In this document: positions 1,423 to 50,370 of the stretch, piece after piece
Position numbering within the stretch: the stretch's first letter is position 1
How the letters are laid out: the number at the start of each line of letters is the position of its first letter
Assembly: GCA_039096225.1 (NCBI GenBank)
Contig: JBBPEB010000014.1
Span: 62,001 to 126,000, forward strand
Length of the DNA stretch: 64,000 nt
Source of the DNA: Blastocystis sp. Blastoise
Lineage: Eukaryota; Protista; Bigyra: Opalinata
Direction: 5' to 3'
Notes under the pieces: generated by a model
Told to the model about the DNA's origin: nothing
The model's database searches: none
The model's input: only the letters and a program-made list of their open reading frames with translations
Program-made: the position numbers and the translations under genes

Positions 1423-2019
1423 CTATATATAATATAATAAGATTAGCATAAAATATTATAATATCATTACTATTATAAAGCAAATAGGCAAAAAAATTCC
1501 CATTGGTCAGTTTTTGGAAAAACCATTTGATTGGCTAAGGTATACTATAGTTTGTACCCACAACTCCTCTAAACTTACGGGGAGTTAACTTTTGGTTGAA
1601 ACACAGTTCAATACGATATAAGCTGTAGTTTTGCACCGTATATTTGGTTAAGCGATATTGTTTATAATTAAAAAGTTATTAGTAAAAAAACAGAAAACAT
1701 GATTTTTGAGTCGTTTTTGATTGGCTCTTTGGGATCGTCCCGATAAAAATTGTTGACCAGACAATTGAAAAATAAACATGGGGTAAACTTGATTTTTTCT
1801 CAATCCCACAATATACGTTATCCGTGTTTATTCTTTATATTTATCTATTTTTTAATACTTTTTCATATTGAACACGTGAGGCCTTAACGGTCAAATTTAG
1901 ATTGTCAATTTGACATCATATTCTGATTCAGGAGGTCAAAAAACCTAGGTGTACCAATTTTCAGCTCCTGAGGACGATTTTTGAGTGATCGATATTTTCT
2001 TCGATCTTCTTATAATTGA

Positions 2020-3200
2020 CTAATATTACAGTATTGTAATTAATAGGTCCTCAAACCACTATAGTCAAAGCAGAGTCTTAAAATAACGAGTTTGAGTGTC
2101 ACAATTTTGAAAAATGTGAATTAAGTGGTCTTAGAGGACAAGATTCAATATAATGACTTTTGTTTAGTAAACTAGAGATATTACTCTATACTATATCAAA
2201 ACAAGAGTCAAAATTAATAGGGTCAAAGTATATGAGCAAATGACAAAATGTGTCTTAAAAAGTAAAAGGGTTTCTATATGTGTTTAGAATCATATATTAA
2301 GTCTATTTTATGAATAATAGCTTTAAATAAATAGTTTAAGGTTGTCAAATTCAAAAGAATGTGTAAAACATAGTCTTAGACTTTGAATAAAAAATTTAGA
2401 GATATTAATTAGTGTACAGCTGTAGTAGCTCTACAACATATCAAAAGTACAGTTAAAATAATTTTTAAAGAATGGATGTGTGAGGTGTTGTGACTATTAT
2501 TTAAAATTTATTTTTACTTCAGTTTATGTTAAATCATGAATTTCGTGCACTATAAAAAAATTGAGCCAAAAAATTAACTCTAAGGGTCTTAAATTTAAAA
2601 AAATGTAAAAATGAGTGACTTAGAGGACGAGATTCAAAATAAGAGTGTTTATTCATTAAACTAGAGTGTATGACCTATATTATGTTAAAAGGAGGGACAA
2701 AAATATTTTGATCAAAGTGTATGACCAAATGGTAAAGTGTCTTTAAAAGTGTTATGGTGATGACAGTTGTTGTTATCGATCCAAGTCAAGTCTACTCTTA
2801 AAATATTAGCTTTAAATAGCAAGTTAAAGGTTGTCTATTTGTCAAAATGTTTTAAAGACTGTCCTAAAATAAGAGATTCAAGAAGTTGACTTTCATTTTA
2901 TACATTATATGTCTATATAAATACTTTATCAAAAGAACTTTGGAAAATATTGTCGATTAGTGTTTTGCCAAATGGTAAAGTTGTATCAAGAGTTGATTGT
3001 TTCCATTCATTTTTGTTTAAATCAGTATTTTATGTCCACTCTATAAAAACTATCTTTTAATACTGAGTTTAAAGTTTTAAAGTCAACATGTGTGTTTGGT
3101 TTGTTTACTTTTAATTATTAAAATTGAGTTTAAATCAATAAAACAAGTTTAACACATGTATTTTGATTGATATAATCAGTTTTAAGATGACTTGGCTGTT
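2020..3200. repeat. Degenerate ~244-bp tandem repeat (4-5 units) in outer Helitron
   Basis: Recurring motifs (G)AGATTCAA at ~2141, ~2630, ~2872 and CAAATG at ~2237, ~2726, ~2969 give spacings of ~244 and ~488. Confidence 0.7.
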
Positions 3201-3401
3201 TAAGTATAAATGGATTTGTTCTCATTGTGACTGTTATTGAGAAGAGGAAGTCTACAAAAAATATAAAAAGTTAGATATATATATATAAGGTCAAAATTGA
3301 AAAGTATAATTTAAAACAAATAAAAATAAGGTTAAAAAAAGAGAATATATATATATATATAATAATATGTAAATAAAATATTTAAAAAAAGAAAAATAAG
3401 A

Positions 3402-3468
3402 CTTCATGTCAGGAATTGAACCTGAAAACAATCTATAATGATTGCTTCTCTCCTTCTAGAGCATAAAG
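3402..3468 (-). ncRNA. tRNA-like cloverleaf, copy A
   Basis: Minus strand CTTTATG-CTCT agaagg AGAG-AAGCAATC attata GATTGTTT-TCAGG ttcaatt CCTGA-CATGAAG: four stems, a GG-containing D-like loop and a T-loop/B-box GGTTCAATTCC. Confidence 0.7.
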
Positions 3469-3491
3469 GGAGTTTAAAGAGTAATAATAAT

Positions 3492-3529
<38 letters not shown>

Positions 3530-3535
<6 letters not shown>

Positions 3536-4135
3536 GGAATGAAGGAAGTAGGAAGAATGTGGAAGTAGGAAGTAGGAAGAAAGAAGAAGGAAGGATGAAG
3601 GAAGAAGGAAGAAGTAGGAAGAAGGAAGAAGTAGGATGAAGGATGAAGGAAGAAGAAGGAAGAAGGAAGAAGTAGGATGAAGAAAGAAGGATGAGGAAGT
3701 AGGAAGAAGAAGGAAGAAGTAGGAAGAAGGAAGAAGGAAGAATGAAGGATGAAGGAAGAAGAAGGAAGAAGGAAGAAGTAGGATGAAGAAAGAAGGATGA
3801 GGAAGTAGGAAGAAGAAGGAAGAAGGAAGAAGAAGGAAGAAGGAAGAATGACGGATGAGGAAGTAGGAAGTAGGAAGGAAGAATGAAGAATGAAGAATGA
3901 AGAATGAAGAATGAGGAAGTAGGAAGAAGAAGGAAGAAGGAAGAAGAATGAAGAATGAAGAATGAAGAATGAAGAATGAGGAAGTAGGAAGGAAGAATGA
4001 AGAATGAGGAAGAAGGTAGTAGGAAGGATAAGGAAGAAGTAAAATGAAGTAGAAAGAAGGAAGAAAGAAGAAAAAGGAACAAGAAGACTATTAAACCTAT
4101 ATACAATAGAAAAAATATAAAAAGATAACATAAAA

Positions 4136-4166
<31 letters not shown>

Positions 4167-4238
4167 AATAAATAAATAAATATAATAAATATAATAAATA
4201 TAATAAATATAATAAATATAATAAATAAATAAAAAACA

Positions 4239-4310
<72 letters not shown>

Positions 4311-4327
4311 TATATAAATATATATAA

Positions 4328-4374
<47 letters not shown>

Positions 4375-4855
4375 AAAACATAAATAATAAATAATAAAAA
4401 TGAAAACAATAAATAAAATATAAATATATACCTAATGGATTAATCTGAAACCACAGACTAAAGAAGAACGACATGAAAAAACGAAGACCACAACACATCA
4501 ACAACATTTTCTTTCCTATAGAATAAAAATAATTAAAAACTATTTAATAGATGATATAAAAAGACAAAATAAATAATATAGATAATAAAATTAAATAATA
4601 ACAAAAAGTAATTAGTAAAAAATAAACAGATGTTAAGAAATAAATAATATATTTATATACCTGATAATAAGTAACCCATTTCACACAACCAGGACCACTT
4701 TAAGAACCACTCACCACCACAACCAAGACAAATACAAGAGAATCCTATAAAAAAGTGTATTATTATAAATAAATAAATTAATATATACAAATAAATATAA
4801 AAATAATAACTAAATAACATCAAATTAATTAATAAAACATACCCAGACAATCAAT
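3530..4855 (-). other. Spliced Helitron-internal transcript, divergent from the microexon gene (coding status unclear)
   Basis: Conserved GT-AG exons 4744-4661 (GFSCICLGCGGEWFLKWSWLCEMGYLLS) and 4515-4432 (GKKMLLMCCGLRFF...), and an exon from 4096 into the CT-rich tract. The splice sites are kept in the nested copy; no clear upstream ATG. Confidence 0.5.
3533..4090. repeat. Polypurine (GAA/GGAA/GAAT) low-complexity tract
   Basis: ~550 bp built from gaag/gaagga/gaatga/gaagtag units; inverted homologue at ~11300-11730. Confidence 0.9.
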
Positions 4856-4891
4856 ACAAACAAATATTTAAAAAATGTAAAAAACTATAGT

Positions 4892-4907
4892 TTTTGGGTA
4901 CCCAAAA
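4892..4907. promoter_or_regulatory. Perfect 16-bp palindrome TTTTGGGTACCCAAAA between divergent transcription units
   Basis: Exactly conserved in the nested copy (10607-10622) while its flanks diverge. Confidence 0.5.
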
Positions 4908-5100
4908 TGTTTTTAACAAAAAATGACCCAATTATCAGCTTAGCATAAGATAATAATGAAAATTCGAGGTTATTTATGATTCCTATTAATTTTTAAATAT
5001 GCATATTTTAAATATTGTCCCTATTTTACAAAAGTTCAAATATGAATATGTTTTTGTTTTCTACATAAAAATACTTATTTTTATTAAATTATTAAATAAG

Positions 5101-6453
5101 ATGCCTAGAAAAGGCAGAATGTCATCAAGGCGGAGGTCCTTGAACAAAAAAAACTACCTTTCTCAAAGACGGTCCAGTATGTATTGTATTTATTTTTTTT
5201 TATTATTCATATATAGGTTCTTCTACTCAACAGGATACAAGTATGGATGTCATTGATGGTGATGGTGCTTATCAATATGGTCTTGAAAGTATATATTTAT
5301 ACATTTCTTTTTGTTTTATTATTTTATATTATCTTAGGCTCTTCTATGTCCTTGGTGTCCTATTCTGATGATGGTGTGAGGTTATCGTGTGGTCCTGAAG
5401 GTATGTTGGCATTCATTTGTTTTTATTTTTATATTTTATTTTCTATAGGTTCTTCTATTGTTGTGGACTCTGTTGCTGGAGCTATTGATGGTGATGTTAA
5501 CTCTACTCACGGTCTTGAAGGTATGTTGTCAATCATTTATTTTATTTTTTTTTATTTTTATTTATCTATAGGTTCTTATACTCATGATGATGTTGTTGCT
5601 GATGCTATTGATGGTGGTGTTAACTCTACTCATGATCTTCAAGGTATATAATCATTCATTTATTTATTTATTTTTAATTATTTCTTTTATTTCCTATTTA
5701 TATTTTATTATAGGTTCTTCTGTTGCTGTGAATGTTAGTGCTGATGTTATTCATGAAGAAGGTATATATAATCTATTTTCTTTTTCTTCTTTTTGATTTA
5801 TACTTTTATTTTATAAATATATATAGGTCCTTCTGTTCTGATAGTGTCTTCTGTTCATGGTACTGTATCTGATGGTGATCATCCTTCTGAGGCTAAAGGT
5901 ATATAGATATATCATATATATATATTTATTATTTTTCTTTTAATTCTTTCTTATTTGTTTTTATATAGGTCCTTCAACTCAGTTAGTACATGGTCATTCC
6001 TCTATTCCTTCTTCAGAAGGTATATACATATATATATGTATCTATGTTTATTCTATTTTATGATTCTATATAGGTGTGTCTTTTAATTTGGGATCGTGTG
6101 ACTCTGATGTTGGTCTTGATATGGTTACTACTAATATATATAAAGGTATATATATATATATATAATATTATTTATTTATTTATACTTATACTATTGTATA
6201 TATATATATATATAGGTGATGGTGTTAATAATTTTTCAGTCGTTGATGGTGTCAACAATTCTTCAATTATTCAAGGTATATATATACTTATATCATATTC
6301 TATACTTATATAGGTTCAAATAAAGTTGTGGGTAAGTATTATTTATTATTTTAGTTTGTTTTTCTTTTGTTTTATTTTTTTTTTTCTTTCACAGATAATA
6401 GCTTTCTGTTGTCTGCTTTCTTTTTATTATCTATTTATATATTTATTTACTAA
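5101..6453 (+). CDS. Helitron cargo gene: 12 short exons joined by phase-1 introns; basic N-terminus, acidic Gly/Ser/Val/Asp repeats, hydrophobic tail
   Basis: ATG 5101 MPRKGRMSSRRRSLNKKNYLSQRRS, then exons SSSTQQDTSMDV..., GSSIVVDSVAGAIDGDVNSTHGLE, GSYTHDDVVADAIDGGVNSTHDLQ ... GSNKVV, DNSFLLSAFFLLSIYIFIY* (TAA 6451-6453). All introns are GT-AG and the spliced frame is open. Confidence 0.75.
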
Positions 6454-6984
6454 GCTTAGCTTTAGCTACTTAGTATTTAAATATTTAATAGAATCCTTTC
6501 TTTTTTCATTTTTGTTTTGTTATTTTTTTTTATTTTAATTTTACTTTAATCGTATCGATTAACGGGAAGGTGTCGGATATTAAGATAATTTTTGAATTAC
6601 TTAATATTAAATAGTGTTGAGTATTTTAATATTTGTATTTAATTTAATTAATACAACTATTGATTACATATATGACTCATACTATTGCTGACTATTGTTC
6701 GCTTCTAACTCTATATAGTCTAACCGATGTAATACTATCAATGATTGAGATATCTAAGTGTTAAGATTCTTCACTTACTCACATTGTATATGATATTAAC
6801 TGGTAGTTAGCTATATGTTTATAGAATGTTGTAACAAAGCACAATAGCTATAGATGCCCGCTATGAGGTTGAATCATATAGATTGTTTAATAAATTATAC
6901 AATATTAATTACCTATACTTATTTAATATTAGTTTTCATTAATTATAATATTATCTTTCATTACATTATAGTATTGAAGATAAT

Positions 6985-7422
6985 TATTAATTAATAAAGT
7001 TTTTACTTTATATTATTTAATATATCATACTATATGTATATATTATTATATTAATAAAGGTTATATACTTTATATTAATAAATATATCATAGTATATCTA
7101 TGTATTATTATATTAATAAATGTTATATACTTTATATTAATAAATATATCATAGTATATCTATGTATTATATTATATTAATAAATGTTATACTTTATATT
7201 AATTAATATATCATAGTATATCTATGTATTATTATATTAATAAGAGTTATATACTTTATATTAATAAATATATCATACTATACTTATGACTTATATTATA
7301 TTAATAAAGGTTATACTTTATATTAATTAATATATATCATACTATACTTATGTATTATATTATATTAATAAAGGTTATACTTTATATTAATTAATATATA
7401 TCATATTATATTCTATGTATTA
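6985..7422. repeat. ~60-bp AT-rich quasi-palindromic tandem array, left part
   Basis: About 7 units of TATTAATAAAGGTTATACTTTATATTAATTAATATATATCATACTATAC/TTATGTATTA; continues at 13782. Confidence 0.9.
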
Positions 7423-7472
7423 CTAGGGTCACGCCGCAGGTCCGGGGCCTAACGGCACCGGACCGCGGCTGC
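7423..7472 (-). terminator. Helitron 3' terminal hairpin + CTAG of the nested element
   Basis: GCCGC GGTCCGGT GCC gtta GGC CCCGGACC t GCGGC gtgacc CTAG. Confidence 0.9.
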
Positions 7473-7630
7473 AATGAATAATAAGTGTTTTGTTTTTATT
7501 CACTTTCTTTCCTTATTATCTACTATATATTATATAATATATATTATTTATTAAATATTATCTATAATATGTTACTTATTATCTATAATATGTTACTTAT
7601 TATATATTATATATAGTATTTTATTAACAC

Positions 7631-7700
7631 TTCTTATACTCTATATGGAGAGTTACAATCATATATTGATTGTAATCAGGTTCAATTCCTGATATAAGAA
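7631..7700 (+). ncRNA. tRNA-like cloverleaf, copy C (diverged)
   Basis: TTCTTATA-CTCT atatgg AGAG-TTACAATCA tatat TGATTGTAA-TCAGG ttcaatt CCTGA-TATAAGAA; compensatory changes relative to copies A and B. Confidence 0.7.
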
Positions 7701-7899
7701 TTAAAATTTACTTTTGAATAGTATCTGAAAAACTAAAAACAATACTTTAAAAAAAATAAGAAATCGTTTTTGAATCATTATATTTGTTATTTATTATTTT
7801 AAAAATATATTTTGTATTTATAAATAGTTGAGTTACTGCTTTAATTATTATGGAGTTTCTAAAGCTAATAAATTTAGAAATGGGTCACAATGTTAAGTA

Positions 7900-8720
7900 T
7901 TGAAAGTCATTATTATGTAAAATCATTTTAAATAGATTATAATAAGGTAGTTTACACTTTCTTTAACCATTTCATAAAACTAAAACGAATCTAACACAAC
8001 AAAGTCAACATTCATTTTCACTTTAACGACTTAAACACATAATTTTAGAATTAATATTAATAAAGTCACTCTAAAAAGCATTTCTATACATAAAAGTGTC
8101 AACAATATCGCTTGTAAAGAGACTTCACCATTTTGATATCCAGTGTATCAAAATAGTTTTAGACATAACTTTCACATAGTATAGATCTCATTATTTCATA
8201 TATTACTTATAGTTGAATGTCTTGAATCTCTGACCTAAAGACCCTTTTTTATACATTTTGAAAAGTTAACACACTTATAGTTAATTTAAAAAGCTTATAT
8301 TTTAACACTATGCTCAACATAACTCTATCAATACATTAGCTACCATTTTGACACTCTTTATAAACATTTTTCATTTGGTCATACACTTTGTCAAGAGTAT
8401 TTTTGTCCCTCCTTTTAATATAATTCAGACTATAAATAATAGTTTGATAAATAAAATGTTTTATATTGAATCTCGTCCTTTGGATAATTCATTTCTACAT
8501 TTTAAAAAAATAATCCCTTTAAACTTGTTTTTAAAAGTCAAAATTTTCATAGTATAACAAAAACACAATTTTAAAAGAATAGACTTACTCTTTAAAATTT
8601 CTGAACAACTCAAACGCATTCTTAATTCACTTGTCAAAAATGAAATTCTCTTATTTTTTAATATGTTGTAGAGTACATGTTGTTCTATATTAAACAATTT
8701 CTATAATTTTAAATCTCTTA
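7900..8720. repeat. Third, diverged block of the ~244-bp repeat
   Basis: TTGAATCTC at ~8222 and ~8466; CATTTGGTCATACACTTTG at ~8372 matches ~12514 and ~13003. Confidence 0.65.
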
Positions 8721-8961
8721 ATTTAATAACCTATTTTTTCACATTTCTTATTGCTTAAAATTTTACACATAATTAAATATATAAATGAAAGTGGAGAATA
8801 CAAAACTTAATAATAACTCAATCATTGATGTAATTATATCGCTAGTCTATATCAGATTAGGTGATAAATGAATGTTATTATAAATTAAAACAATATTAAG
8901 GACCACATACTAATAACATTAACTAATTTCAAAATTATCTTAATAGTAAGCACAATAAAAA

Positions 8962-10412
8962 TTATAAAAAACGAACAAAACAAAAATAAATAAATAATAC
9001 TAAGAAAACAGATAATAGAAAGATATTATCTGTGAAAAAAAAAAATAATAATAATAAACAAAGCAAAACAAAACAAAACAAAAATAAAATAATATGTTAA
9101 GTATGCCAACCAAATTAGAAGAACCTATAGAAATAAAAGATAAATATATATATATATACCTTCAGCATTAAAGAACTATTTACACCATCACTATATAGAT
9201 AAAATATATAGATATATATATTAAAAGAAATATAAATATTTGTTATATATATATATATATATATATACCTTTAGATATATTTTTATTATTAAAATAAAAG
9301 CCAACATTAGGGTGATAAGATCCCCTATTAGAAAAGACACCTATATATAATAAATAATAAAAAATATATAAACAATAAAAATATATATACCTTCTAAAGA
9401 AGGAACAGAAAAATAAGTATCATATCATAACTGACTTGAAGAACCTATATATAATGATAAGATAATTAATAAATTAAAAAAAAAGAAAGGAAGAAATAAG
9501 TATATACCTTTCATTACCTATAATAGAAGACTCGATCAGAATAGAAGGACCTATATATAAATAATAAATAAAAATAAACTAAATTAAATTAAAAAAATAG
9601 ACATACCTTAATTATTAACACCTTCAGCAACCACACACACAACAATAAAAGAACCTATAAAGAAACAGTAATAGACAAATAATAAATAAAAAAATAATAA
9701 TAATAAATGAATGACAATATATATATATACCTTTAATACCATAGGAACAGTCTATCTGATCACCAACAACATCAACAGCAGTATTGAAAACATCAGAAGA
9801 ACCTAAATATATATAAAAGTAAAAAAGAAAAATAAATGAATGACAACATACCTTCAACACTACACAGATATCTTCATCTACACCACTGTTTACATGCACA
9901 GCAACTGAAGAACCTATATATATATATAGAAATAATAAAAAAATAATAATAAAATATAAAAATAAATTAAATGATTGGCAACATACCTTCAATACAATAA
10001 GAAGAACCTACAATCACATCATTAGAACCATTAGCATCATTTAAAACAACAGAAGAACCTATAAATAAAGAAAAGTTAAAAAAATAAAAACAAATCATTG
10101 ACAACATACCTTCACAGTTAGCATAACAGGCAACACCACCACCACTGCATAATTCAAATAGCATAGAAGAACCTAAAATAATATAATAAATAATTTAAAA
10201 AAAAAAAGAAATGGAAAAATATATACATTAAAGACCATCATAGCAAGTACCACCAAGACCAAGAGCATACACAACTGGATTTTATTGAGTAGAAGAACCT
10301 AAATATGAATAATAATAACAAATAGATATAATATACCTGATTTTCTTTGAAATATATATTATTTTTTATTTCCAGACCTCCTCCTGGATGACATTTTGTT
10401 GTTTTTAGACAT
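8962..10412 (-). pseudogene. Nested-element copy of the microexon gene, with in-frame stops
   Basis: ATG 10412 MSKNNKMSSRRRSGNKK*YIFQRKS (TAA where the outer copy has AAC); TGA in the exon at ~9392-9444; same GSS...G exon architecture; ends DNIFLLSVFLVLFIYFCFVRFL*. Confidence 0.7.
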
Positions 10413-10659
10413 CTTATTTAATAATATAATATACAATTAAGTATTTGAATATGTATTTAAGAATCCTATTTCATTTGTATTAATAAATATAATAGGGTCT
10501 ATTTTCAAAATATGCTTCTTTAAACATAATAGAAATCAAAAAAAACCTTAATTTTTCATTGATTTATTTACTAAAGTAATAATTGGGTCATTCTTATTTA
10601 AAATCATTTTGGGTACCCAAAAAACATAGTTCTTTACTCTTTTTTTAAATATTTAATTA

Positions 10660-11730
10660 TATTGATTGACTGAGTATGTTTTATTTATTTATTTGATATT
10701 GTTTAGTTATTATTTTTATATATATTTGTATGTATATATTTATTTATTTAAAATAATACACTTTTCTATAGGATTCTTTTGTATTTGTCTTGGTTGTGGT
10801 AGTGAAGGGTTCTTGAAGTGGTCTTGGTTGTGTGTAATGGATTACTTTGTTTCAGGTATATAAATATATTATTTATTTCTTAAGATCTGTTTTTCTTTTT
10901 GTTAATTCGTTTTTATTATTTATTATTTTTATTATCAATATTATTTATTTAGTCTTTACATATAATTTATTCTATATATTATTAATAATTTTTATTCTAT
11001 AGGAAAGAAACTTCAATGGATGTGTTGTGGTCTTCGTTGCTAAATATTTTCCTTCTTTAATCTGTCGTTCAAGGTTATTTTAAAGGTATATATTTATATT
11101 TTATTTATTATTTTTATTATTTATTGTTTACATTTTTTTTTATTATTTATTTATTTATTTATTATTTATTTATTCATTTTTTTTATATGTTTATTTATTT
11201 ATTAATTATATATATATATATTTATATATATATTTATTGTTTATTATTTATTTATTTATTTATTTATTTATTATGTTTATTTATTGTATATAGGTTTAAT
11301 ATTCTTCTTAGTTTTTTTTTTTCTTCTTTCTATCTTCGTTCTTCTTCCTTCTTACTTCTTCCTTCTTCCTCATCCTTCCTACTTACTTCATTCTTCCTTC
11401 CTTCTTCTTCCTTCTTCCTTCTTCTTTCTGCCTTCTTTCTTTTCATTCTTTACTTCTTCCTCCTTCTTCCTTCTTCCTCATTCTTCCTTCATTCTTCGTA
11501 CTTACTTCTTACTTCTCCCTTCTTCTTCACCTTGGTTCTTCATTCTTCTTCCTCCTTCCTTCTTCCTTCTTTCTTCTTCCCCATCCTTGATTCTTCCTAT
11601 TTCCTTCTTCCTCATCCTTCTTTCTTCCTTCTTCTTCATCCTTCCTTCTTACTTCTTCATCCTTCCTTCTTAAACTTCCTCCTTCCTTCTTCCTTCTTCC
11701 TTCCTACTTCCTACTTCCTACTTCCTCCTT
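10660..11730 (+). other. Nested copy of the divergent spliced transcript and CT-rich tract
   Basis: Exon GFFCICLGCGSEGFLKWSWLCVMDYFVS; next exon GKKLQWMCCGLRC* (stop); then the CTT-rich tract. Confidence 0.5.
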
Positions 11731-11777
11731 ATTATATATATATATATATATTATTATTATTATTATTTATAAACTCC

Positions 11778-11844
11778 CTTTATGCTCTAGAAGGAGAGAA
11801 ACAATCATTATAGATTGTTTTCAGGTTCAATTCCTGACATGAAG
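11778..11844 (+). ncRNA. tRNA-like cloverleaf, copy B
   Basis: CTTTATG-CTCT agaagg AGAG-AAACAATC attata GATTGTTT-TCAGG ttcaatt CCTGA-CATGAAG. Confidence 0.7.
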
Positions 11845-12049
11845 TCTTATTTTTCTTTTTCTTTAATATTTTTTACGTATTATATATATATATATATTTT
11901 CTCTTTTTTTAAACTTATTTTTATCTCTTTTAGATTATACCTTTTAAATTTTGACATTATATACATATATCTAACTGTTTATAGTTTTTTTAGACTTCCT
12001 CTTCTCAACAACAGTCACAATGAGAACAAATCCATTTTAACTCAAACAA

Positions 12050-13220
12050 CTAAGTCATCTCAAAACTGTTTGAATCAATTAATATAGACGTCTATGACAT
12101 AATTTATCAATTTAAACTGATTTTCAACTCTCAAAAGTAAGCAAACCAAACACACATGTTGACTTTAAAACGTTAAACTCAGTATTAAAAGATAGTTTTT
12201 ATAGAGTGGACATAAAACATTGATTTAAACAAAAAGGAATGGAAACAATTCACTCTTGATACAACTTTACCATTTGACAAAACACTCATCCACAATATTT
12301 TCCAAAGTTCTTTTGTTAAAGTGTTTATATAGACATATTATGTATAAAATGAAAGTCAACTTCTTGAATCTCTTTGTTTAAGATAGTCTTTAAAACATTT
12401 TGACAAATTGACAACCTTTAACTTATTAGTTAAAGCTAATATTTAAAGAATAGACTTGATTCAGACATATAAACACAACTGTCATCATCATAACACTTTT
12501 AAAGACACTTTACCATTTGGTCATACACTTTGATCAAAATATTTTCGTCCCTTCTTTTAACATAATATAGATCATACACTCTAGTTTAATGAATAAAAGC
12601 TCTTATTTTGAATCTCGTCCTCTAAGTCACTCATTTTTACATTTTTTTAAATTTAAGACCCTTAGAGTTGACCTTTTGACTCAATTTTTCCACAGTGCAC
12701 GAAATTCACGATTTTGCTCAAACTGAAGTAAAAATAAATTTTAAATAATAGTCACAACACCTCACACATCCACTCTCTAAAAATTATTTTCTTTGTACTT
12801 TTGATATGTTGTAGAGCTACTACAGCTGTACACTAATTAATATCTCTAAATTTTTTATTCATAGTCTAAGACTATGTTTTACACATTCTTTTGAATTTGA
12901 CAACCTTAAACTATTTATTTAAAGCTCTTATTCATAGAATAAACTTGACTTAACATTCTATACACATATGCAAACCCTTTTTCTTTTTAAGACACATTTT
13001 GTCATTTGGTCATACACTTTGACCTTCATAATTTTGACTCTTCTTTTAACATAGTATAGAGTATTATCTCTAGTTTATTAAATAAAAGTCATTATATTGA
13101 ATCTCTCACTCTAAGACCACTTAATTCACATTTTTCAAAATTGTCATACTTAAACTCATTATTTTAAGACTCTGTTTCTACTATAGTAGTTTGATGACCT
13201 ATTGATTACTATGATACAAT
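12050..13220. repeat. ~244-bp degenerate repeat block in nested Helitron
   Basis: Reverse complement of 2020-3200; TTGAATCTC at ~12364, ~12608, ~13097. Confidence 0.7.
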
Positions 13221-13781
13221 ATTAGTCGATTATAAGAAGATCGAAGAAAATATCGATCACTCAAAAATCGTCTTCAGGAGCTCAAAATCGCTACACCTAG
13301 GTTTTCTGACCTCCTGAATCAGAATATGATGTCAAATTAAGAATCTAAATTTGACCGTTAAGGCCTCACGTGTTCAATATGAAAAAGTATTAAAAAATAG
13401 ATAAATATAAAGAATAAACACGGATAACGTATATTGTGGGATTGAGAAAAAATCAAGTTTACCCCATGTTTATTTTCCAATTGTCTGGTCAACAATTTTT
13501 ATCGGGGTCATCCCAAAGAGCCAATCAAAAACGACTCAAAAATCATGTTTTCTGTTCTTTTATTAATAACTTTTTAGTTATAAATAATATCGCTTAACTA
13601 AATATACGGTGCACAACTACACGTTATATCGTATTGAACTGTATTTCACTCAAAAGTTAACTCCCCGTAAGTTTAGAGGAGTTGCGGCGACAAACTATAG
13701 TATATAGTAGCCAATCAAATGCATTCTCCAAAAACTGACCAATGGGAATTTTTTTGCCTATTCTCATATATATAGTAATGA

Positions 13782-14015
13782 TTATATTAATAAAGGTTAT
13801 ACTTTATATTAATTAATATATATCATACTATACTATATGTATGTATTATTTTATTAATAAAGGTTATACTTTATATTAATTAATATATATCATACTATAC
13901 TATATGTATGTATTATTATATTAACAAAGGTTATACTTTATATTAATTAATATATCATACTATATCTATGACTTATATTATATTAATAAAGGTTATACTT
14001 TATATTAATTAATAA
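13782..14015. repeat. ~60-bp tandem array, right part
   Basis: About 4 further units in the same orientation as 6985-7422. Confidence 0.9.
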
Positions 14016-14122
14016 TTACTTCAACAACCATAACAATGAAAGTTAATTTATATAATACACAACTAAACTTTATTCTAAACTTAAACATAATATAATTAAT
14101 ATCTAACTATTAATATATATAG

Positions 14123-14795
14123 GTTCCAATAAGGATAAAATAAATAATAATGATTTATCTAAATCATTTGGTTTTAACACTAAACCTTTAGCTTTGTTTT
14201 CGACTTTTAATATACAAAATAATATTCCTTTACAAAACATTCAAAACAATAATTCAAATAACAATATTGATATTGATATAGATAATGATTATTCACAAAT
14301 AAATAATAATAATTCTATGTTAAATAATGGTTCAAACCTATTCAATCAAATGAATCCAGTTAATCAATCAATTAATAACATATCTATTGTTCAAAGTCAA
14401 ATTAATAATAATAATCAATCTATTCCTATATCAACTACTATTATACAACCTACAGAAAAAAATACTTTTGTTTCTAATAATAATAATGATTCTATTAATA
14501 CTTCTTCACACTCTTTACCTGTTGTTACTACTATTCCAACTGATGTAAGTATATCTAACAATAATAATTCTGCAATCATTAATGATAATACGAATCATTC
14601 TATAAATAGCATTAATACTAATAATAATGAAACAATAATACAAAGAAATAATAGATCTATTAATTCTATCATGAATAGTTATTTAACTATTCCTGATTTA
14701 AGTCCTATTCTTCCTCCTTTAAGTTTGATAACAAATATTCCTCATATTAATTTAAATAATGATAATGAATCAGAAATTATAACAACAATACCTAA

Positions 14796-14853
<58 letters not shown>

Positions 14854-17800
14854 TTTTCTGATAATGATTCTGATTCTGATTATATTGATCCTTTTCCTGA
14901 TATCAATAGTAATACTCAAAACAATGATGAAATACCAGTTGTAAGAACTATTAGAAGACCTATAACAGATAATAGTATTTTTTTTATTATTTAAATATAT
15001 TTATTTAATACTTTTTTATAGTTGAAGAAGACATAACTATTCATCCTATTATTAATAGAGGAAGAAGAAGAGCTTTAGATATTTGTATGATATTTATATT
15101 CTATAATTCTTTATGAATAATTAAATAATAAAATTATTTTTATAGATAATCAACAAAGATTATTATATCCTGGATTACATAATTGTATTGCTTCTATTCA
15201 AAGAAGTATTTATATATATTTAATATTTATTTTATATTATTTTATATAGATTCTCATGGTGATTTTGTTTTAAATGAAGCATTGAATACTTATAAAGCTA
15301 ATTATTTAGGTGATTTTAATGTTCATTGTGAATATTGTCATGCTAAACATTTTGAATTAGAGAAAGGAATGAATGATAAGTTTTATACTTGCTGTGGTAG
15401 TGGTAAAGTAGTTCTTCCTGAACTTCCTGATCTTCCTAATACTATTCGTTCTTTGTTAAGAAGAGATAATCCAGATTCAAGAGAATTTATTAATAATATA
15501 ATTCGATATAATAATTCTGTTGCTTTAGCTTCTTTAGCTGGAAATAATACTTCTGATGATGATTTAAGAAATTCTTCTGGACCTTTACTATTTAAATGTG
15601 GAGGTAATATATATCATACTTTTAAGAGTGCTTTAGATTTTGATGTGAATGATCCTACAAGACATCCTGTATTCAATCAGTATTATATGATAGATGGAGA
15701 TGAAGCTACTCATATGAGAAGTATGAATCGATATTTTTGTGATTTAAAACCAAATATTTTAGAGATATTAGATAGTACAATAAGAGAATATCATCCATTA
15801 GCTCAAATATATAATTCACTTCGAGAAAGAGTAGATGAAGTAATAGAAGAGAATAGCCAAATGAATAGAAATAATATTAATTTATTAATAGAGTTTAAGA
15901 AACAAAGAAGAGAAGTACCTGATATAAGAAGATATAATACTCCTCAAGTAGATGAAGTAGCAGTAATATATCAATATAGAGAAGGAGGAGTAATGCCAGA
16001 AAGAAGTTATTGTTGTTTTCCTAGAAGTGGTATGGAAATAGTAGCTACTAATAGTAATAATGAACAGAATCGTTATACTTCAGGTCAATATATAGTAATG
16101 AAGAATACTAATTCATATATAGATTGTATGGTTTATCCAGTTATGTTTCCAACTGGAAGACAAGGTTGGTATCCAGATTTATTATCATTGAATCGTTCTA
16201 ATCAAATTACTATTACTATGTTAGAATATTATAATTATATGCTTCAAATGAAAGATCCACCTTATGATAATTATTTATTAAAATATAAGAAATTAACTTT
16301 ACAATATATTACTGATAATTATATCCGTGTTGAACAATATAGATTGAATTATATACGAAATAATCAAAATAAGTTAAGAGCTTCAACTTATCAGAATATA
16401 AATAATATGTTAGAAGAGAGAGGAGATCAAATAAATGAGAATGATAGAAATATAGATAGAATAGGTAAAGCTATTATATTACCTTCTTCTTTTGTTGGTA
16501 GTCCAAGAAATTTACAACAGAAATATATGGATGCTATGAGTGTAGTTCGAGAATATGGTAAACCTGATTTATTTATTACATTTACTTGCAATCCAGATTG
16601 GTTAGAAATTAAGAATAATATTCCAGAAGGTTATACTGTTAATGAATTTCCAGATTTAGTTTCAAGAGTGTTTCATTTAAAGTTGAAACAATTACTTTCT
16701 GATATAAAGGATAAGAATATATTTGGTACTGTAGAAGCTTTATTATATTCAGTAGAATTCCAAAAGAGAGGTTTACCACATTCTCATATATTAATTATTT
16801 TAGATACGAATTCTAAATATAGAACAGAAGATGAAGTAGATAGTATAATAAGTGCAGAGATTCCTGATAAAGAATCAACTCCTCTTCTTTATGAATTAGT
16901 TAAGAAACATATGATTCATGGTCCATGTGGTCCTGATTATGATACGAATTGTGTTTGTATTGATAGATCAACAGGTAAATGTAGTAAGAGATTTCCAAAA
17001 GAATATATAGAGCAAACTAACTGTCATTTAAATTCTTATCCTTTATATCAAAGAAGAAATATTCCTGATAGAACTATTACTCTTATTCGTAGTCACAATA
17101 CTTATACTATTGATAATCGTTGGGTAGTTCCTTATAATCCTTATTTATTATTGAAATATCAAGCTCATATTAATGTAGAAGTATGTTGTAATATTCAAAG
17201 TACAAAATATATATATAAATATGCATTAAAAGGAAATGATTCTGTGATAGCTCAATTACGAAGAGTGAATGATAATGGAATAGTAGACGAAACTCAAGCT
17301 TATTTAGATTGTCGATATGTTTCTCCTCCTGAAGCTTCTTATCGTTTGAATTGTTTTGAAATTACTTATAATTCTGTTTCTATTAATAGATTACCTATTC
17401 ATTTACCTGATGATCCATATATATTATTTCGAGAAGGACATGAAGAAGAAGCATTAAGAAATAGTTTAGAGAAAGGTACTAAATTAACAAAATACTTTGA
17501 TTTAGAGAAAGAAGTTCAGAATCAAAGAAAGATATATACTTATTATTATATAGAGAAGAAGCATGGTATTCGTAATATGAATAATGTAGAAGAAGAAAGA
17601 GAATTGATTCAAGTTCGTTTAGAAGAGATAAATAGAATAAATAGTTATGAAGTAGATGATGATAATATATCCGAAGAATTATTGAAAATATTAGATGAGA
17701 AATATCCTATTTATGCTTATCATGAAATACCAAAATATTATGTATGGAAATCGAATACAAATACTTGGAATAGACGTCAGAGAGATATAAAAGCTTTAGG

Positions 17801-19862
17801 AAGAATGTATTATGTGAATCCAAAAGATAAAGAACGATATGCTTTGAGATTATTATTATTGAATACGAAAGGAGCTGATAGTTTTGATTCTTTGAAGATA
17901 GTAAAAGGATTGAATCGTAATGAACCTTATAGAACCTTTAGTGAAGCAGCTATAGCAAGAGGATTATTGAATAATGAGAGAGAAGTATTTGATTCCTTTT
18001 CAGAAGCTATTGTTTTTGCTACTCCATGTCAATTGAGACAATTATTTATTACTTATATTTCAGAATCATTATTAACAAATGTGAAAGAGTTTTGGATTCG
18101 ATTTAAATCATTTCTTAGTGAGGATTATAAACATTCAATGCATAATAATGAAATAGATTATATAAATACTCCTTTAGCTCAAGATTTAGATTCATCAAGT
18201 GTTATAGAAGATGATACTAATAGTGTTCTTCAAGATTATGAAATACGTACTTTACAAGATATAAAAGAGATGATGATAAGTATAGGAGTGAATTATAATG
18301 ATTTAGGATTACCTCAAGTAGAAGAACAACATCATTATAATGATTATAATTATAATCCTACTTTAGAATTACAAGAAGCTAATAGAGTAATAGAATTATT
18401 AAATGAAGAACAAAGAAATGCATTTGATAGAGTAATTCATTCAATAGAAAGTAGTAGAATAGAAGATAAGTTATGTTTCTTTATTGATGGTCCAGGTGGA
18501 AGTGGAAAGACTTTCTTATATAATAGTTTATTAAGTTATTTACGTGGATATAATAAGAATGTATTACCTGTAGCTTCAACAGGAATTGCTTCTACTTTAT
18601 TACCAGGTGGTAGAACAGCTCATAAACAATTTGGTATTCCTTTGAATGTTGATCCTGATTCTACTTCAAATATAGATTTAGCTAGAGATAGAAGAAAAGT
18701 AGAAGAAATAAGAATAGCTGATTTAATAATATGGGATGAAGCTCCTATGATGAAAGGTGATTGTTTTATGGTAGTACATAGATTATTATGTGATATAATG
18801 AATACAGAATTAGATATTCCTTTTGGTGGTAAAACAGTAGTATTAGGAGGAGATTTCAGACAATGTTTACCAGTTATAAGAAAAGGAACTCAAGCTCAGA
18901 TTGTTAGTTCTTCTATAAAGTTTTGTTCATTATGGAATTCTATCAAAAATAATGTTATTCATTTATCGAGAAATATGAGAGCTTTAGAAGGAGCAGATGA
19001 TTTTAGACAATGGTTATTACAAGTAGGAGATGGTGTTCTTTCTAATAATTATACTATTAGTCATCATTTAGATATAGATTATATTCCTATTCCTCCTCAA
19101 TGTATTGTAAATGATGATTTATGTGTTACTGTATTTGGACATAGAATCAATACTTCTCTTGATTCTGATATCAAACGATTAGCTTCTTCTGTTATATTAG
19201 CTTCTACTAATGATTGTGTTGGTACTTTAAATGATTTCATTGTTGATAATCTTCTTTCTGGAACTACTATTCCTTATATCTCTTCTGATTCTATTCTTGA
19301 TTCTGAAACAGATGATCCAGAATCAAATTATCCTATCGAGTTTATTAATTCTCAAACACCTTCTGGAATGCCTCCTCATATATTAAATTTAAAAATAGGT
19401 TGTATCATTATGCTTTTAAGAAATCTTAATCCTTCTAAAGGATTATGTAATGGTACTAGACTTATAGTTACTCGATTAGGATCAAATAATATTACTGCTA
19501 CTATTTTAAATCCTCCTCCTTCTCTTACTATTGATGAACGTACTGTTATTATTCCAAGAATCATCTGTAATTCAAATCCTGAAGATCTTCCTATTATTAT
19601 ATCCAGAAGACAATTTCCTATTCGTTTAGCCTTTGCAATGACTATTAACAAATCTCAAGGACAAACATTTGAAAGAGTTGGTGTTTATTTAGATCGTCCT
19701 GTCTTCTCTCATGGTCAACTCTATGTTGCTTTCAGTCGTGCTCGATCTTTCAATTCCCTTTTTATTAAGGTAGTTGATAGTGTTTCTCAAGGTAAGATGA
19801 TTAGTAGTAGTAATGAAATATTTACTAAGAACGTGGTCTTCAGGTCTACTCTAAATAATTAA
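14123..19862 (+). CDS. Helitron Rep-helicase (HUH endonuclease + PIF1-like SF1 helicase) with spliced Asn/Ser-rich N-terminal extension
   Basis: Zn-finger-like CEYCHAKHF...TCCGSG; Rep motifs FITFTCNP, VEFQKRGLPHSHIL, KYIYKYALKG; helicase motifs GPGGSGKT, IWDEAPM, GGDFRQCLPV, TINKSQGQTF, FSHGQLYVAFSR. Exons 14123-14974, 15022-15084, 15146-15205 and 15250-19862 join in frame via phase-1 GT-AG introns. True start unresolved. Confidence 0.97.
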
Positions 19863-20023
19863 ATGTTTTCTTTTCTTTTCTCTTCTTTTTGTTTTATTTG
19901 TTTTTTATTATTTATTTAACTTTTTACCTTTTCACTTTTTATTTGTTCTAAAAATGTTTTTAATAAACAAGATTGTTTTGTTAGCCCTTATTTAATACAT
20001 ATTTTAAAACCCAACTGAACAAC

Positions 20024-20073
20024 GCAGCCGCGGCGCGTCGCCGTTAGGCGGTGCGCCAGCGGCGTTACCCTAG
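20024..20073 (+). terminator. Helitron 3' terminal hairpin + CTAG of the outer element
   Basis: GCCGC GGCGCGTC GCC gtta GGC GGTGCGCC a GCGGC gttacc CTAG|T. Confidence 0.93.
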
Positions 20074-20160
20074 TTAAAATAAATAAAAATTAAATAAATA
20101 TTTAATATAGGAAAATAAAAAAAAAGAAAAATGTTAATGCAAACGAAAAAAAATATATAC

Positions 20161-20485
20161 GATATTTATATACTATTGATAACATATTTGGTTGTTGTTT
20201 GACAGTGTTTTGAGTTAGTAGAACCGAAAAAAAACCTAAAAAAAAATAAAAAAGAAATGGAAAAAAATACCTTGTTAAACAAAAGTAGCAGCAACTCTGT
20301 TGATTAAATTTTTGAGGTTGACCAAGGAGACAGTCTGATACGAAGAGGGACTCCAGAATGGAAAACCTAAAAGAATTATGAAAATAAATATAAAATATTT
20401 AATAAATAAATACTGACACAATACATTCTTGTCTTCTAAACATACATAAACACTGTGAGAGGCTCTAATTCCTCTTAGAGACAAT
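20161..20485 (-). pseudogene. Probable upstream exons of the host gene interrupted by the Helitron
   Basis: GT-AG-bounded blocks at ~20271-20366 and ~20161-20235. The donor at 20160 and the branch/acceptor at ~1445/1423 bracket the Helitron. Frame could not be resolved. Confidence 0.35.
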
Positions 20486-21566
20486 AAAATAAAAATAATT
20501 ATAAATTCACTAATAAATTCAAATGTTCAAGTGAAATACAAAATTTTTCATGAAAATACCTTTCTTTATTTTTTTTTAATTTTTTATGACTCACTATCAT
20601 ATTTATAAGTTATGACACGTTTCACACTACACCATCTATACAATACTACTGCATCCCACACTTTTAACCTTTAAAAAAATAACTCATTTTTGTTGACTCT
20701 CTGATCTGTTGACTAACTCGTCCAAAAACTATTAATTATAACTTAAAATGTCCATCCGTTGAAGAATTAACTCTAAAAATGACTTAAAAAAAGACTTTTA
20801 GTTGATTCTGAAAAATAACCCTTTATTTATAAGCTTTGACATACTCTTTGTATGCGGAACTTTAAGTCATGATAGAATAAAATAAAAAAAGTCTTTTAAA
20901 ATTCTTATGTCCTCTGATATATAATAAAATAAAAATAGACTCAGTTTTGAACAAGAAAATTATTCCCGTAAATATTTTAAAAATTCAAAACTCTGGTCTG
21001 ACTGCCCATGGAACAAATAGGCTCGGTTCAATTTTTCAGTGTAAAAAAAATGTAAATTTTTGACTTTTTGGCTGAATTTTGGTTTTGAGCCATAGAGGTC
21101 AGCTGATTGACTTTTAATTACATTTATGACTCTGAGAGGGTCTTCACTTCAAACACAACTATAAAATATTTTAAAATATTGACCCCATTATTTGTCGGAA
21201 TTGCGACTTTAAAATAAAGAAAAACGTTTTGGATATTGTGTGACCCTCAATAAACAAAAAATAATGTCAATTCTTTATTAAAATATGTCTAATAGGGTTT
21301 TTAAAGTCTAATAGAACGTCGTCTTAAAAATTTTTGTGAAAATTTTCATTTTTTTGCCTAAGTCTTTTTTTTATTCAAATTTTATTGGCTGAATAAGTTC
21401 TGAACGAAAATTAGCCAATCAAAAACCTTCAAAAACTCAAAAGTGCCTACCAGTGATTGTTATATGTCTCGTACTGTTTTTATGTGTTCCTGGCAGTACT
21501 AAATGCGCGGATTCAATTGAATTCAACAGTATTTGATCATTTATATTTTAATTTAATTATTTATAG

Positions 21567-35915: not shown

Positions 35916-41838
<5,923 letters not shown>

Positions 41839-42525
41839 ACATTTATTTTACATATATTTTATAATATGTTTATAGCTATTTAACTTATTACTTTTCAAAA
41901 TATTTTATTATACTTAACCATTTAAGCTACATATCTTTCATAAACCATATTAATATTTATTATTAAACTTTTTTATTTCATGCAAATGTTATATTTTAAC
42001 CGAATCCAATTATATTTTATTATAATATATTTAAGAACTCTTTAATAATTTCATTAAACATATTATTGAACCATAGTGCTGTTTTAATAATATATATATA
42101 TATATATATATATGTTTTTTAAGCTAATTTATGATATAAAATATAGAATTTGAATAAATTATAAAACGTTATTCATACAACATATTTAAATAATGACTCT
42201 ATTAATAGAGACTAAAACATATTGAACAAAATGATTTTTTACTTTTTTCTTGTATGAGTGGAATTAAGCAATATATAGAATGAAACCCAAATATATATCA
42301 GAGTATATATGTTTAATTATCATTTTAAATTTATAAAGTGTTGCGTTTTTGAATGATATTAAAAAATATACATTTCCCTTTAATAGAATCTTAATATTGC
42401 TAATCTTAATAAAGGACAGAACAACAAACAAATAGAAAATAAGGATATTTATTATGAATAATATAATGAATAAAAAATATTTATTAAAAATTAAAATATA
42501 TATATATATATTTTGTATATAAAAA

Positions 42526-44174
42526 CTAAGCTCTTCCCCACACTTCGTACTCTTCGACTTGAAAGTAGTTATAATTTTCACTACTATTTGTATTCACAAA
42601 TAAGGAACTCTTTTGAGGTGTGTTGAATTCATCATAGCAGGATGCATGGCAATAAGAATCATTGTTACTATGACAGTTATTCGATAAATAAATATCGCAA
42701 TCGTATCCGAAGTTTGGGGCATACACTTTATCTGAACAAATAGCGAAACTTTTATCACTATTTATATAACCATATTTAGTAGCAGGAATACCATGTTCAT
42801 TAATTAATGTAAATACAAACTCTTTTGAATAAGATTTCCAACCTATAATATATATAATAGTATATATATATAGTATAAATATATATATAAACCAATATAC
42901 CTGGATATTCTAGAGACTCCCAACTTTGATCTGTATATCCTCCAAATACATTAATCTGATTATCATGACCTATATGCTTGATTATAGTTACTGTTTCTCC
43001 TTTATTATCGCAATATTTATGGAATTCGTCTTTATCATAATTATGTTCACTTGCTCTATATATAATATATAATCATTAAAAACATATATAAAGTAATAGT
43101 GACAATACAAACTAATAATATTAGCAATGGCTATAAACTTAAAAAGCTTAATAATATATACCTAAACAATAATTTCCACTTTTTTTCTTCTCCAAGCCAA
43201 TCTACTAAAGAAACAATATTATCTTCATTTAATATCAACGATTGCTTAAAATTTCCTTTTACTAATTTCTTATGAGCTTCTTTTCTTCCTTTATCACCAA
43301 ATAATTCATTCATTTCTTTCTTTAATAATTCTTTATTAATATCGTTAATCTTATCTTCTTCTATATCTATATATCCGTTATTTACATATTGAGTAATATA
43401 ATTAATATATTCATATTGTTTATTCATATATAAACTATCTTCAATATGATTATAATCAACAAATCCATTATTATAATTCATAACATAATTATTCCATAAT
43501 CCATTATTTATTAAATATTCTTTAATATTATCATTATTATTTCCATTAGTTATTAAATCAACATTATCACCATTGCTGTATTTCTTCATTTTTGTTTCTT
43601 TTCGCTCTCTGACGAACAATAATTCCTCAGGAATTGGTAATCTACAAAATTCAAATAAATCTAATAGTTCAAGCTTTTCGAGATAACTAAATTCACTAAA
43701 ATTAACTTTTTCACCATTAAGATAATCCAATAAATAATACACAAAAGCATCATTTCCACAATAATCAAGATATATTGTTCCATCAATTGTTCTACGTTCA
43801 TCAGCACGACATTCATCAATAAAAGAGCCCTTTAGCGAATCAATAACTACGTTTGACACCTTAAAAACAGGACCATTATTCGTAAAACGAATAAGTTCCA
43901 TTCCTTTGTTATTAAATTCATCATCAGGAGATAAATGCATATTCATTCTACTGTATACAAGAATTTCATTAAGAGACTTTTCATAAGGATACAAGAAATC
44001 TTCTTCTTCTGATCTACGAATTGTATTCATACGCTCGTTCAGATATCTGAGTATACTTAATAAATTATTACCAATGTTAATAATACAAGTAATCATCACA
44101 ATTATACTCATAGCTATACATTTATATATAATGAAGTTCTTATTAGTCTCTTGATCTTGATCTCCACTATTCAT
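42526..44174 (-). CDS. TLDc-domain protein in the spacer of the inverted duplication
   Basis: WLGEEKKWKLLFR|ASEHNYDKDEFHKYCDNKGETVTII, VFGGYT, FVFTLINEHGIPA, APNFG, FQVEEYEVW. Confidence 0.88.
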
Positions 44175-44508
44175 GATGTTCTATATTTTAATATCTTTAA
44201 ATTAAAAATAAAAATGAGAAAACAATAGAAAAAACTTTTTAATTTTGGAATCTAGAGCAAAATCTGAAAATCTCATTGTTTAAAAAGTACTAGCTTTGTG
44301 ATATTTTTCGTTTTTATATTTTTATATAGTTTTTTCTTATTTTTAATATTAGGCTGCATATATGATATATTCTGTATATATATATGTCTCAAAAATATGG
44401 TAAACACAAAAAAAAAATGACTTCTTAATTGATCTCAAGTTTGTTGTTCGTAAATAATATAACTGATATACGTATAGTACGCTTTATTCTTATAAAGAGT
44501 GTATTGTA

Positions 44509-50370
<5,862 letters not shown>

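What the first reader, a model, noticed from the sequence alone, without database searches (positions are those of the whole stretch)
7423..13781. Helitron nested in its own family member, targeted into the internal palindromic array
Seen: a complete non-autonomous element with the same 5' end (TCATTACTAT...AATAGGCAAAAAAATTCCCATTGG) and a homologous 3' hairpin sits inverted inside the autonomous one. It lies at an A|T inside the 60-bp array, and excising it regenerates a repeat unit exactly. This explains the apparent ~5-kb inverted repeat (1464-6450 vs 8960-13781). Inference: the array may be a preferred landing pad, letting non-autonomous relatives parasitise or disable the master element, and the inverted arms could produce dsRNA.
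Basis: partly seen in the sequence, partly recalled or inferred. Interest (0 to 1): 0.8.

Follow-up and report, generated by a model that had tools for sequence, protein, structure and literature searches.

The report
Blastocystis Helitron nested in its kin
A young 6.4-kb rolling-circle transposon has jumped backwards into an AT-rich intron of a full-length relative in a tortoise Blastocystis genome; the nesting is real and ordinary, and the repeat array it hit is not a dedicated landing pad.

Summary
The nesting is confirmed in the assembly. A 6,359-bp non-autonomous Helitron (13781→7423, A|TC…CTAG|T) sits antisense in a 12,251-bp RepHel-coding Helitron (1464–20073) of Blastocystis sp. Blastoise. 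It has a near-identical twin elsewhere, and uninterrupted 12.1-kb hosts exist. No read check was possible.

Specific targeting of the array is not supported. Of 130 family 3' ends, 2 lie in an array, at different points of the unit. Only 1 of 28 copies of the 6.4-kb class does. Among 14 insertions into autonomous hosts, 2 hit the array, against 0.8 expected by length and 1.4–2.1 by AT-rich target motif. The array folds no better than shuffles, is nearly absent from two full-length copies, and lies in RepHel's longest annotated intron, so the Rep/helicase core is intact.

What is enriched is insertion into kin generally (about tenfold), which is known for Helitrons; the scan noted such nesting elsewhere in this genome. 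Two side leads emerged: three antisense insertions at nt 9–13 of kin 5' ends, and two independent insertions at one base (14113|14114).

The parts
1464..7422 (+). Outer autonomous Helitron, left part; 5' terminus A|TC at 1464
13782..20073 (+). Outer autonomous Helitron, right part; ends CTAG|T
20027..20063 (+). Outer 3' terminator hairpin, 6 nt before the final CTAG
   Evidence: z -3.05
7423..13781 (-). Inner non-autonomous Helitron, 6,359 bp, antisense to the host; twin at G000:C29:210412-216769
7433..7469 (-). Inner 3' terminator hairpin; same fold as the outer one with changed arms
   Evidence: z -4.99
6985..7422 (+). Tandem array, left part (60-64-bp units, 89% A+T over the whole array)
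13782..14014 (+). Tandem array, right part (62-67-bp units)
5101..6331 (+). Phase-1 micro-exons; in NCBI models of uninterrupted copies they encode the first ~225 aa of a ~2,080-aa RepHel
6332..14122 (+). Longest RepHel intron (1,432 bp when empty, 7,791 bp here); holds the array and the insertion. Predicted from annotation of sister copies, not from reads
15183..19862 (+). RepHel core reading frame, 1,559 codons: Helitron_like_N, HUH motif, two-tyrosine motif, PIF1 helicase
8960..13781 (-). Part of the inner element homologous to the outer 5' arm (93% falling to 69%); its micro-exon gene copy has a stop at codon 18
7423..8960 (-). 3' tail of the inner element; about 70-74% like the 3' half of the 2.7-kb non-autonomous class, no RepHel remnant
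14113..14114 (+). Base step hit by two independent family insertions in sister copies (C23, C31); empty in this copy

Best explanation
An ordinary, recent nested Helitron insertion. SHOWN: both elements have canonical ends; the inner one is a mobile unit with a near-identical twin; the family inserts at A|T (mostly A|TA) with ~90% A+T downstream; it accumulates in its own kin about ten times above their share of the genome. INFERRED: RepHel supplied in trans by one of about 20 autonomous copies nicked the inner element's donor at TC, peeled a strand off to the hairpin/CTAG and joined it at an A|T in the array. The array was hit because it is the densest AT target in the host (26 AT steps per 100 bp against 15 on average), not because it is recognised as a landing pad. 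INFERRED consequence: the insertion is antisense, so its hairpin/CTAG lies on the strand that is not read and should not cut the host short; the host could still move whole as 18.6 kb. Its own full-length RepHel mRNA probably suffers from a 7.8-kb intron. Sense insertions elsewhere do appear to truncate hosts and found composite elements.
For: Junctions and lengths. Twin at C29 with 11,441 of 11,468 bits, plus 8 more copies at 91-99%. Uninterrupted hosts of 12,075-12,128 bp at C1, C10 and C14. Flank profile. The array holds 5.5% of host length but 10-15% of motif-weighted targets; 2/14 observed, P 0.41-0.63. Only 2 of 130 ends and 1 of 28 6.4-kb copies are in arrays. The two array sites differ in register. 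11 of 55 distinct flanks are kin DNA against ~2% of the genome. Sense-nested truncation at C14:878839-889414, and a three-5'-end composite repeated on C6, C10 and C1. Literature: AT-rich preference strongest on the 3' side (PMC4778049); insertion near or inside other Helitrons (PMC3288121, PMC12477314).
Against: Small numbers: 14 events cannot exclude a two- to threefold extra preference. Arrays in three more copies are broken by non-family DNA or truncation (C7, C15, C28), and 4 of 14 family events fall in the same intron, two at the same base (P 0.03-0.07). Nine of the 14 events are placed from coordinates only. No reads were examined.
Confidence: 0.78

Rival explanations
1. The array, or the intron around it, is a true preferred target: an easily unwound or RepHel-bound region that draws in kin beyond what its AT content predicts.
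For: Two family hits in the array, two more at 14113|14114 about 100 bp downstream, one at about 14153. Arrays also broken in C7, C15 and C28. Genome-wide, 2 hits against 0.05-0.12 expected. The 6.4-kb classes stop resembling the autonomous element just upstream of the array.
Against: The genome-wide excess disappears once general nesting in kin and AT density are allowed for: intron 4/14, P 0.18-0.33. One of the two array hits is the case that prompted the test. The registers differ. No unusual fold. Full-length copies on C4 and C24 have only ~157 bp there.
Confidence: 0.14
2. Kin enrichment comes from survival rather than targeting: insertions in genes are purged, while those in transposon stacks and introns are neutral and persist.
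For: Many flanks are simple repeats, introns or stacks. This site is intronic. The bat Helitron Helraiser shows no local hopping (PMC4778049).
Against: Several inserts are 100% identical to other copies and so very young. It does not explain three hits within nt 9-13 of kin 5' ends. It is compatible with the best explanation rather than exclusive of it.
Confidence: 0.4
3. Assembly artefact joining two repeat copies.
For: Several contigs of this assembly end inside Helitron stacks, and C1/C10 carry the same stack. No read check was possible.
Against: Both junctions are base-perfect Helitron ends at an A|T, the emptied array has normal length, and the insert differs slightly from its twin. The assembly is built from Nanopore long reads (PMC10690189).
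Confidence: 0.04

Closest known systems
Canonical Helitrons (HLE1/Helitron1), e.g. bat Helraiser/Helibat1 and its HelibatN non-autonomous partners
   Same: TC start, hairpin + CTAG end, A|T insertion without duplication, RepHel with HUH and PIF1 domains, AT-rich preference on the 3' flank, non-autonomous partners sharing the ends (PMC4778049, PMC11417382).
   Different: Larger (12 kb), with a 37-nt terminator hairpin. RepHel is annotated with a ~225-aa micro-exon N-terminus and a long array-bearing intron. The host is a stramenopile; a search for Helitron + Blastocystis found no paper describing this family.
Nested, multi-terminus Helitrons of maize (Dong et al. 2011, PMC3288121; Yang and Bennetzen 2009 as cited there)
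   Same: Insertion near or inside other Helitrons; nested intermediates giving composites with several 5' or 3' ends.
   Different: Here the hosts include intact-looking autonomous copies and very young inserts, so steps can be ordered; the index case is antisense and should not create a new end.
HLE2 (Helentron/Helitron2, DINE-1), which also carry internal repeats
   Same: Rolling-circle elements; internal tandem arrays are common in them (own knowledge).
   Different: HLE2 have short terminal inverted repeats and insert at T|T; this family has TC/CTAG ends and inserts at A|T. No endonuclease domain was found in the core frame.

Membership tests
Canonical Helitron (HLE1) | 5' terminus TC | tested here: met
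   1464 (+) and 13781 (-); 139 such ends in the genome
Canonical Helitron (HLE1) | 3' hairpin followed by CTRR | tested here: met
   Both fold with z -5.0 and -3.05, ending 10 nt before the last base of CTAG
Canonical Helitron (HLE1) | Insertion between A and T without target duplication | tested here: met
   Both elements; T follows CTAG in all 64 flanks read, and A precedes TC in all 16
Canonical Helitron (HLE1) | RepHel with HUH/Y2 Rep and PIF1 helicase in the autonomous element | tested here: met
   PF14214 E 5e-56, PF05970 E 5e-64; motifs at aa 464, 525, 675, 1103, 1183, 1490; no stop
Canonical Helitron (HLE1) | RepHel falls in the HLE1 clade of a tree | not tested
   No tree built; nearest database hits are 41-50% identical Helitron proteins
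Canonical Helitron (HLE1) | Rolling-circle activity (circles, new insertions) | not testable with these tools
   Only indirect: 100%-identical dispersed copies
Non-autonomous Helitron | Shares both ends with an autonomous partner, lacks RepHel, is dispersed as a unit | tested here: met
   No long frame or RepHel similarity inside 7423-13781; 9 full-length copies at 91-100% including this one
HLE2 (Helentron/Helitron2) | Short terminal inverted repeats and T|T insertion | tested here: not met
   Ends are TC/CTAG at A|T
Site-specific (targeted) transposon | Insertions concentrated at one target sequence or register | tested here: not met
   2 of 130 ends in arrays, at different unit positions; 1 of 28 for the 6.4-kb class

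The most novel reading that the evidence does not exclude
The family actively targets its own copies, through RepHel bound to resident elements. The best candidate site is the 5' terminus, not the array: three antisense insertions at nt 9, 11 and 13 and three events abutting the TC (about 0.1 expected in the first 20 nt; P about 2e-4, found after the fact). This echoes the bottom-strand cut at an internal AT of the left end seen with Helraiser in vitro. A second weak spot is the long RepHel intron. Orientation then decides the outcome: sense insertions truncate the host and found new non-autonomous classes, antisense ones ride along.
Probability: 0.2. Interest if true: 0.6.

Novelty: new member of a known kind. 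Interest (0 to 1): 0.3.

Why it matters
As it stands this is a clean example of a known habit, Helitrons piling into Helitrons, in a protist lineage where I found no description of the family. Its value is as material: a young, apparently active family (about 130 copies, many 100% identical) in a cultured, long-read-sequenced organism. There one could test why Helitrons nest (targeting or survival) and whether orientation decides if a nested terminator truncates the host. A sequence-specific landing pad would have been new for Helitrons, but the genome-wide count does not support one.

Tried and rejected

I did not fetch the same DNA through another tool, so 66 of 130 flanks and the uninterrupted copies are known from coordinates only.

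Array as a hairpin signal: rejected, it folds like shuffles. Array as an essential part: rejected, near-absent on C4 and C24.

C7 and C15 array breaks as family insertions: rejected, no family 5' core at the break points.

Inner element as a simple deletion of this outer copy: rejected. Identity falls from 93% to 69% and its tail comes from the 2.7-kb class. Inner cargo gene as intact: rejected, stop at codon 18.

Fold-back dsRNA from the RepHel mRNA: weak. RNase III domain: not found by six-frame search, inconclusive with short exons.

Yang and Bennetzen 2009 is not held and is cited only through other papers. The large representative-protein search was not needed.

Full report
SETTING. The window is G000:C8:62001-126000 of a 33.3-Mb, 34-contig genome. 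Residues 300-700 of the window's RepHel are 100% identical to WA158_002607 of Blastocystis sp. Blastoise. A tortoise Blastocystis genome of 33.3 Mb was assembled from Nanopore reads with Flye; in the passages I searched, that paper gives only overall transposon fractions (PMC10690189), and a Helitron + Blastocystis search did not return it.

OBSERVATION. The outer element runs from A|TC at 1464 to CTAG|T at 20073. The inner element runs on the - strand from A|TC at 13781 to CTAG|T at 7423, with no duplication. Emptied, the host is 12,251 bp; the insert is 6,359 bp. Both 3' hairpins fold alike with changed arms (z -3.05 and -4.99). The apparent inverted repeat is the shared 5' arm, 93% identical near the start and 69% at the far end. 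The core frame 15183-19862 is open for 1,559 codons with Helitron_like_N, HUH, two-tyrosine and PIF1 motifs.

BOTH PARTNERS EXIST SEPARATELY. Uninterrupted hosts lie at C14:1054778-1066905 (12,128 bp), C14:683910-696033 (12,124), C10:16538-28612 (12,075) and C1:398857-410936 (12,080; C1 and C10 share flanks and may be one locus). The insert has a twin at C29:210412-216769 (11,441 of 11,468 bits) and further copies at 91-99%. The emptied junction is a unit form seen 9 times in other copies; the two closest sisters have 2 bp more at the matching place. Reads could not be examined.

WHAT THE ARRAY IS. It has about 12 units of 60-67 bp, 671 bp in all, 89% A+T, and is no more hairpin-prone than shuffles. 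NCBI models of uninterrupted copies (~2,080 aa) splice phase-1 micro-exons at 5101-6331 onto the exon at 14123, so the array lies in RepHel's longest intron (gene predictions, not checked on reads). Full-length copies on C4 and C24 have only ~157 bp in its place, so it is dispensable or a late expansion.

THE INSERT. It is not a deletion product of this host. Its first 4.8 kb follow the 5' arm, its micro-exon gene copy stops at codon 18, and its last 1.3-1.5 kb resemble the 3' half of the 2.7-kb class at 70-74%. The 6.4-kb classes stop matching the autonomous element 200-400 bp upstream of the array. Inference: they arose from an old sense insertion or recombination in this intron.

TARGETING TEST. 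I tabulated 130 family 3' ends and 139 5' ends and read 64 flanks. After CTAG|T the next base is A in 97 of 129 exact ends, and the next 20 nt are ~90% A+T (the flank sample leans towards TA sites), as reported for Helraiser (PMC4778049). Two ends lie in an array: this one and C6:34040 (3,169 bp, also antisense, about 16 bp away in the unit). Of 28 copies of 6.2-7.0 kb, only this one does. Kin DNA as a whole is strongly favoured: 11 of 55 distinct flanks against ~2% of the genome.

The fair test is therefore within hosts. I counted 14 independent family insertions into autonomous-type copies, duplicates merged, nine placed by coordinates only. Five are in the 5' arm, two in the array, two at the intron's 3' end and five in RepHel exons. 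The array expects 0.8 by length and 1.4-2.1 by target motif; P for two or more is 0.18 by length and 0.41-0.63 by motif, and one of the two is the index case. For the whole intron, 4 of 14 gives P 0.18-0.33. A modest extra preference cannot be excluded: arrays on C7 and C15 are broken by non-family DNA and one on C28 is truncated.

CONSEQUENCES (inferred). The Rep and helicase exons are untouched, but the intron grows from 1.4 to 7.8 kb in a gene whose other introns are about 40-70 bp, so full-length mRNA from this copy may suffer; about 20 other RepHel copies could compensate. By the hairpin-terminator model (PMC4778049), an antisense insert should not stop strand displacement and a sense one should. 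Consistent with this, C14:878839-889414 is a host that ends at the 3' end of a sense insert with non-RepHel flank, and a composite with three 5' ends recurs on C6, C10 and C1, as proposed for maize (PMC3288121). No second 18.6-kb copy was seen.

dsRNA. 33 of the 34 perfect runs of 21 nt or more lie upstream of the RepHel start, so fold-back needs read-through from outside. Convergent transcription across the insert is the likelier route. Piwi-domain genes exist; an RNase III domain was not detected (inconclusive).

SIDE RESULTS. First, three antisense insertions sit at nt 9, 11 and 13 of kin 5' ends (the host remainder was found for two of them), and three events abut a TC, against about 0.1 expected in the first 20 nt. 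All three internal ones are in the C6 and C11 stacks, and the pattern was found after the fact. Abutting ends are known in bats, and Helraiser cuts the bottom strand of its left end at an internal AT in vitro. Second, two inserts of different subfamily (89% alike) occupy the same base, 14113|14114, on C23 and C31 (P 0.03-0.07).

VERDICT. A real, recent, antisense nesting of a non-autonomous canonical Helitron in an autonomous relative: a new member of a known kind. The landing-pad reading is not supported. Interest 0.3. Limits: no reads, a capped flank sample, small numbers.

Noticed in passing
G000:C6:21862-21877, C11:14952-14969, C11:33377-33396: Three antisense family insertions at nt 9, 11 and 13 of another copy's 5' end; three more events abut a 5' TC with TA, TAA or (TAA)8 between. 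About 0.1 expected in the first 20 nt.
   Followed up: partly
window 14113|14114 (G000:C23:282473-285229 and C31:784224-786904): Two independent sense insertions at the same base, 9 nt before a RepHel splice acceptor. In the NCBI model P0134 an ATG in the insert's 3' end reads through the hairpin in frame into RepHel (1,881 aa).
   Followed up: partly
window 5101-6331 and 14123 onward: RepHel is annotated with a ~225-aa N-terminus built from short phase-1 exons of repeated type; function unknown.
   Followed up: partly
G000:C6:59604-73397, C10:1761-15518, C1:411958-420343: A ~13.8-kb composite with three 5' ends and one 3' end recurs, apparently born from sense nesting and then moved into another RepHel.
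   Followed up: partly
window 20099-21435 vs L054 (G000:C15:650565): The outer element's 3' flank is 75% like the flank of another family copy over 1.36 kb: both inserted about 25 bp apart in copies of some other repeat.
   Followed up: no
G000:C7:10555-16657 and C15:185699-194063: Arrays broken by ~3.0-kb and ~5.7-kb non-family DNA, each with family copies nested inside; identity unknown.
   Followed up: partly
window 3406-3535, 11728-11840 and 7575-7695: A conserved ~120-bp block in otherwise diverged DNA, twice in the inner element; earlier notes call it tRNA-like. Not tested.
   Followed up: no
window 35916-50370: A separate large inverted repeat (5.5 kb at 97% plus 426 bp at 99.8%) around a 347-codon frame with no Pfam match; unrelated to the Helitrons.
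   Followed up: no
G000:C1, C6, C7, C10, C11, C20, C23 contig ends: Many contigs begin or end inside Helitron stacks, and C1/C10 repeat the same stack, so copy counts include assembly redundancy.
   Followed up: partly
G000:C26:481274-482069, C17:835499-835765: Piwi-domain genes are present; no RNase III domain was detected by six-frame search.
   Followed up: no
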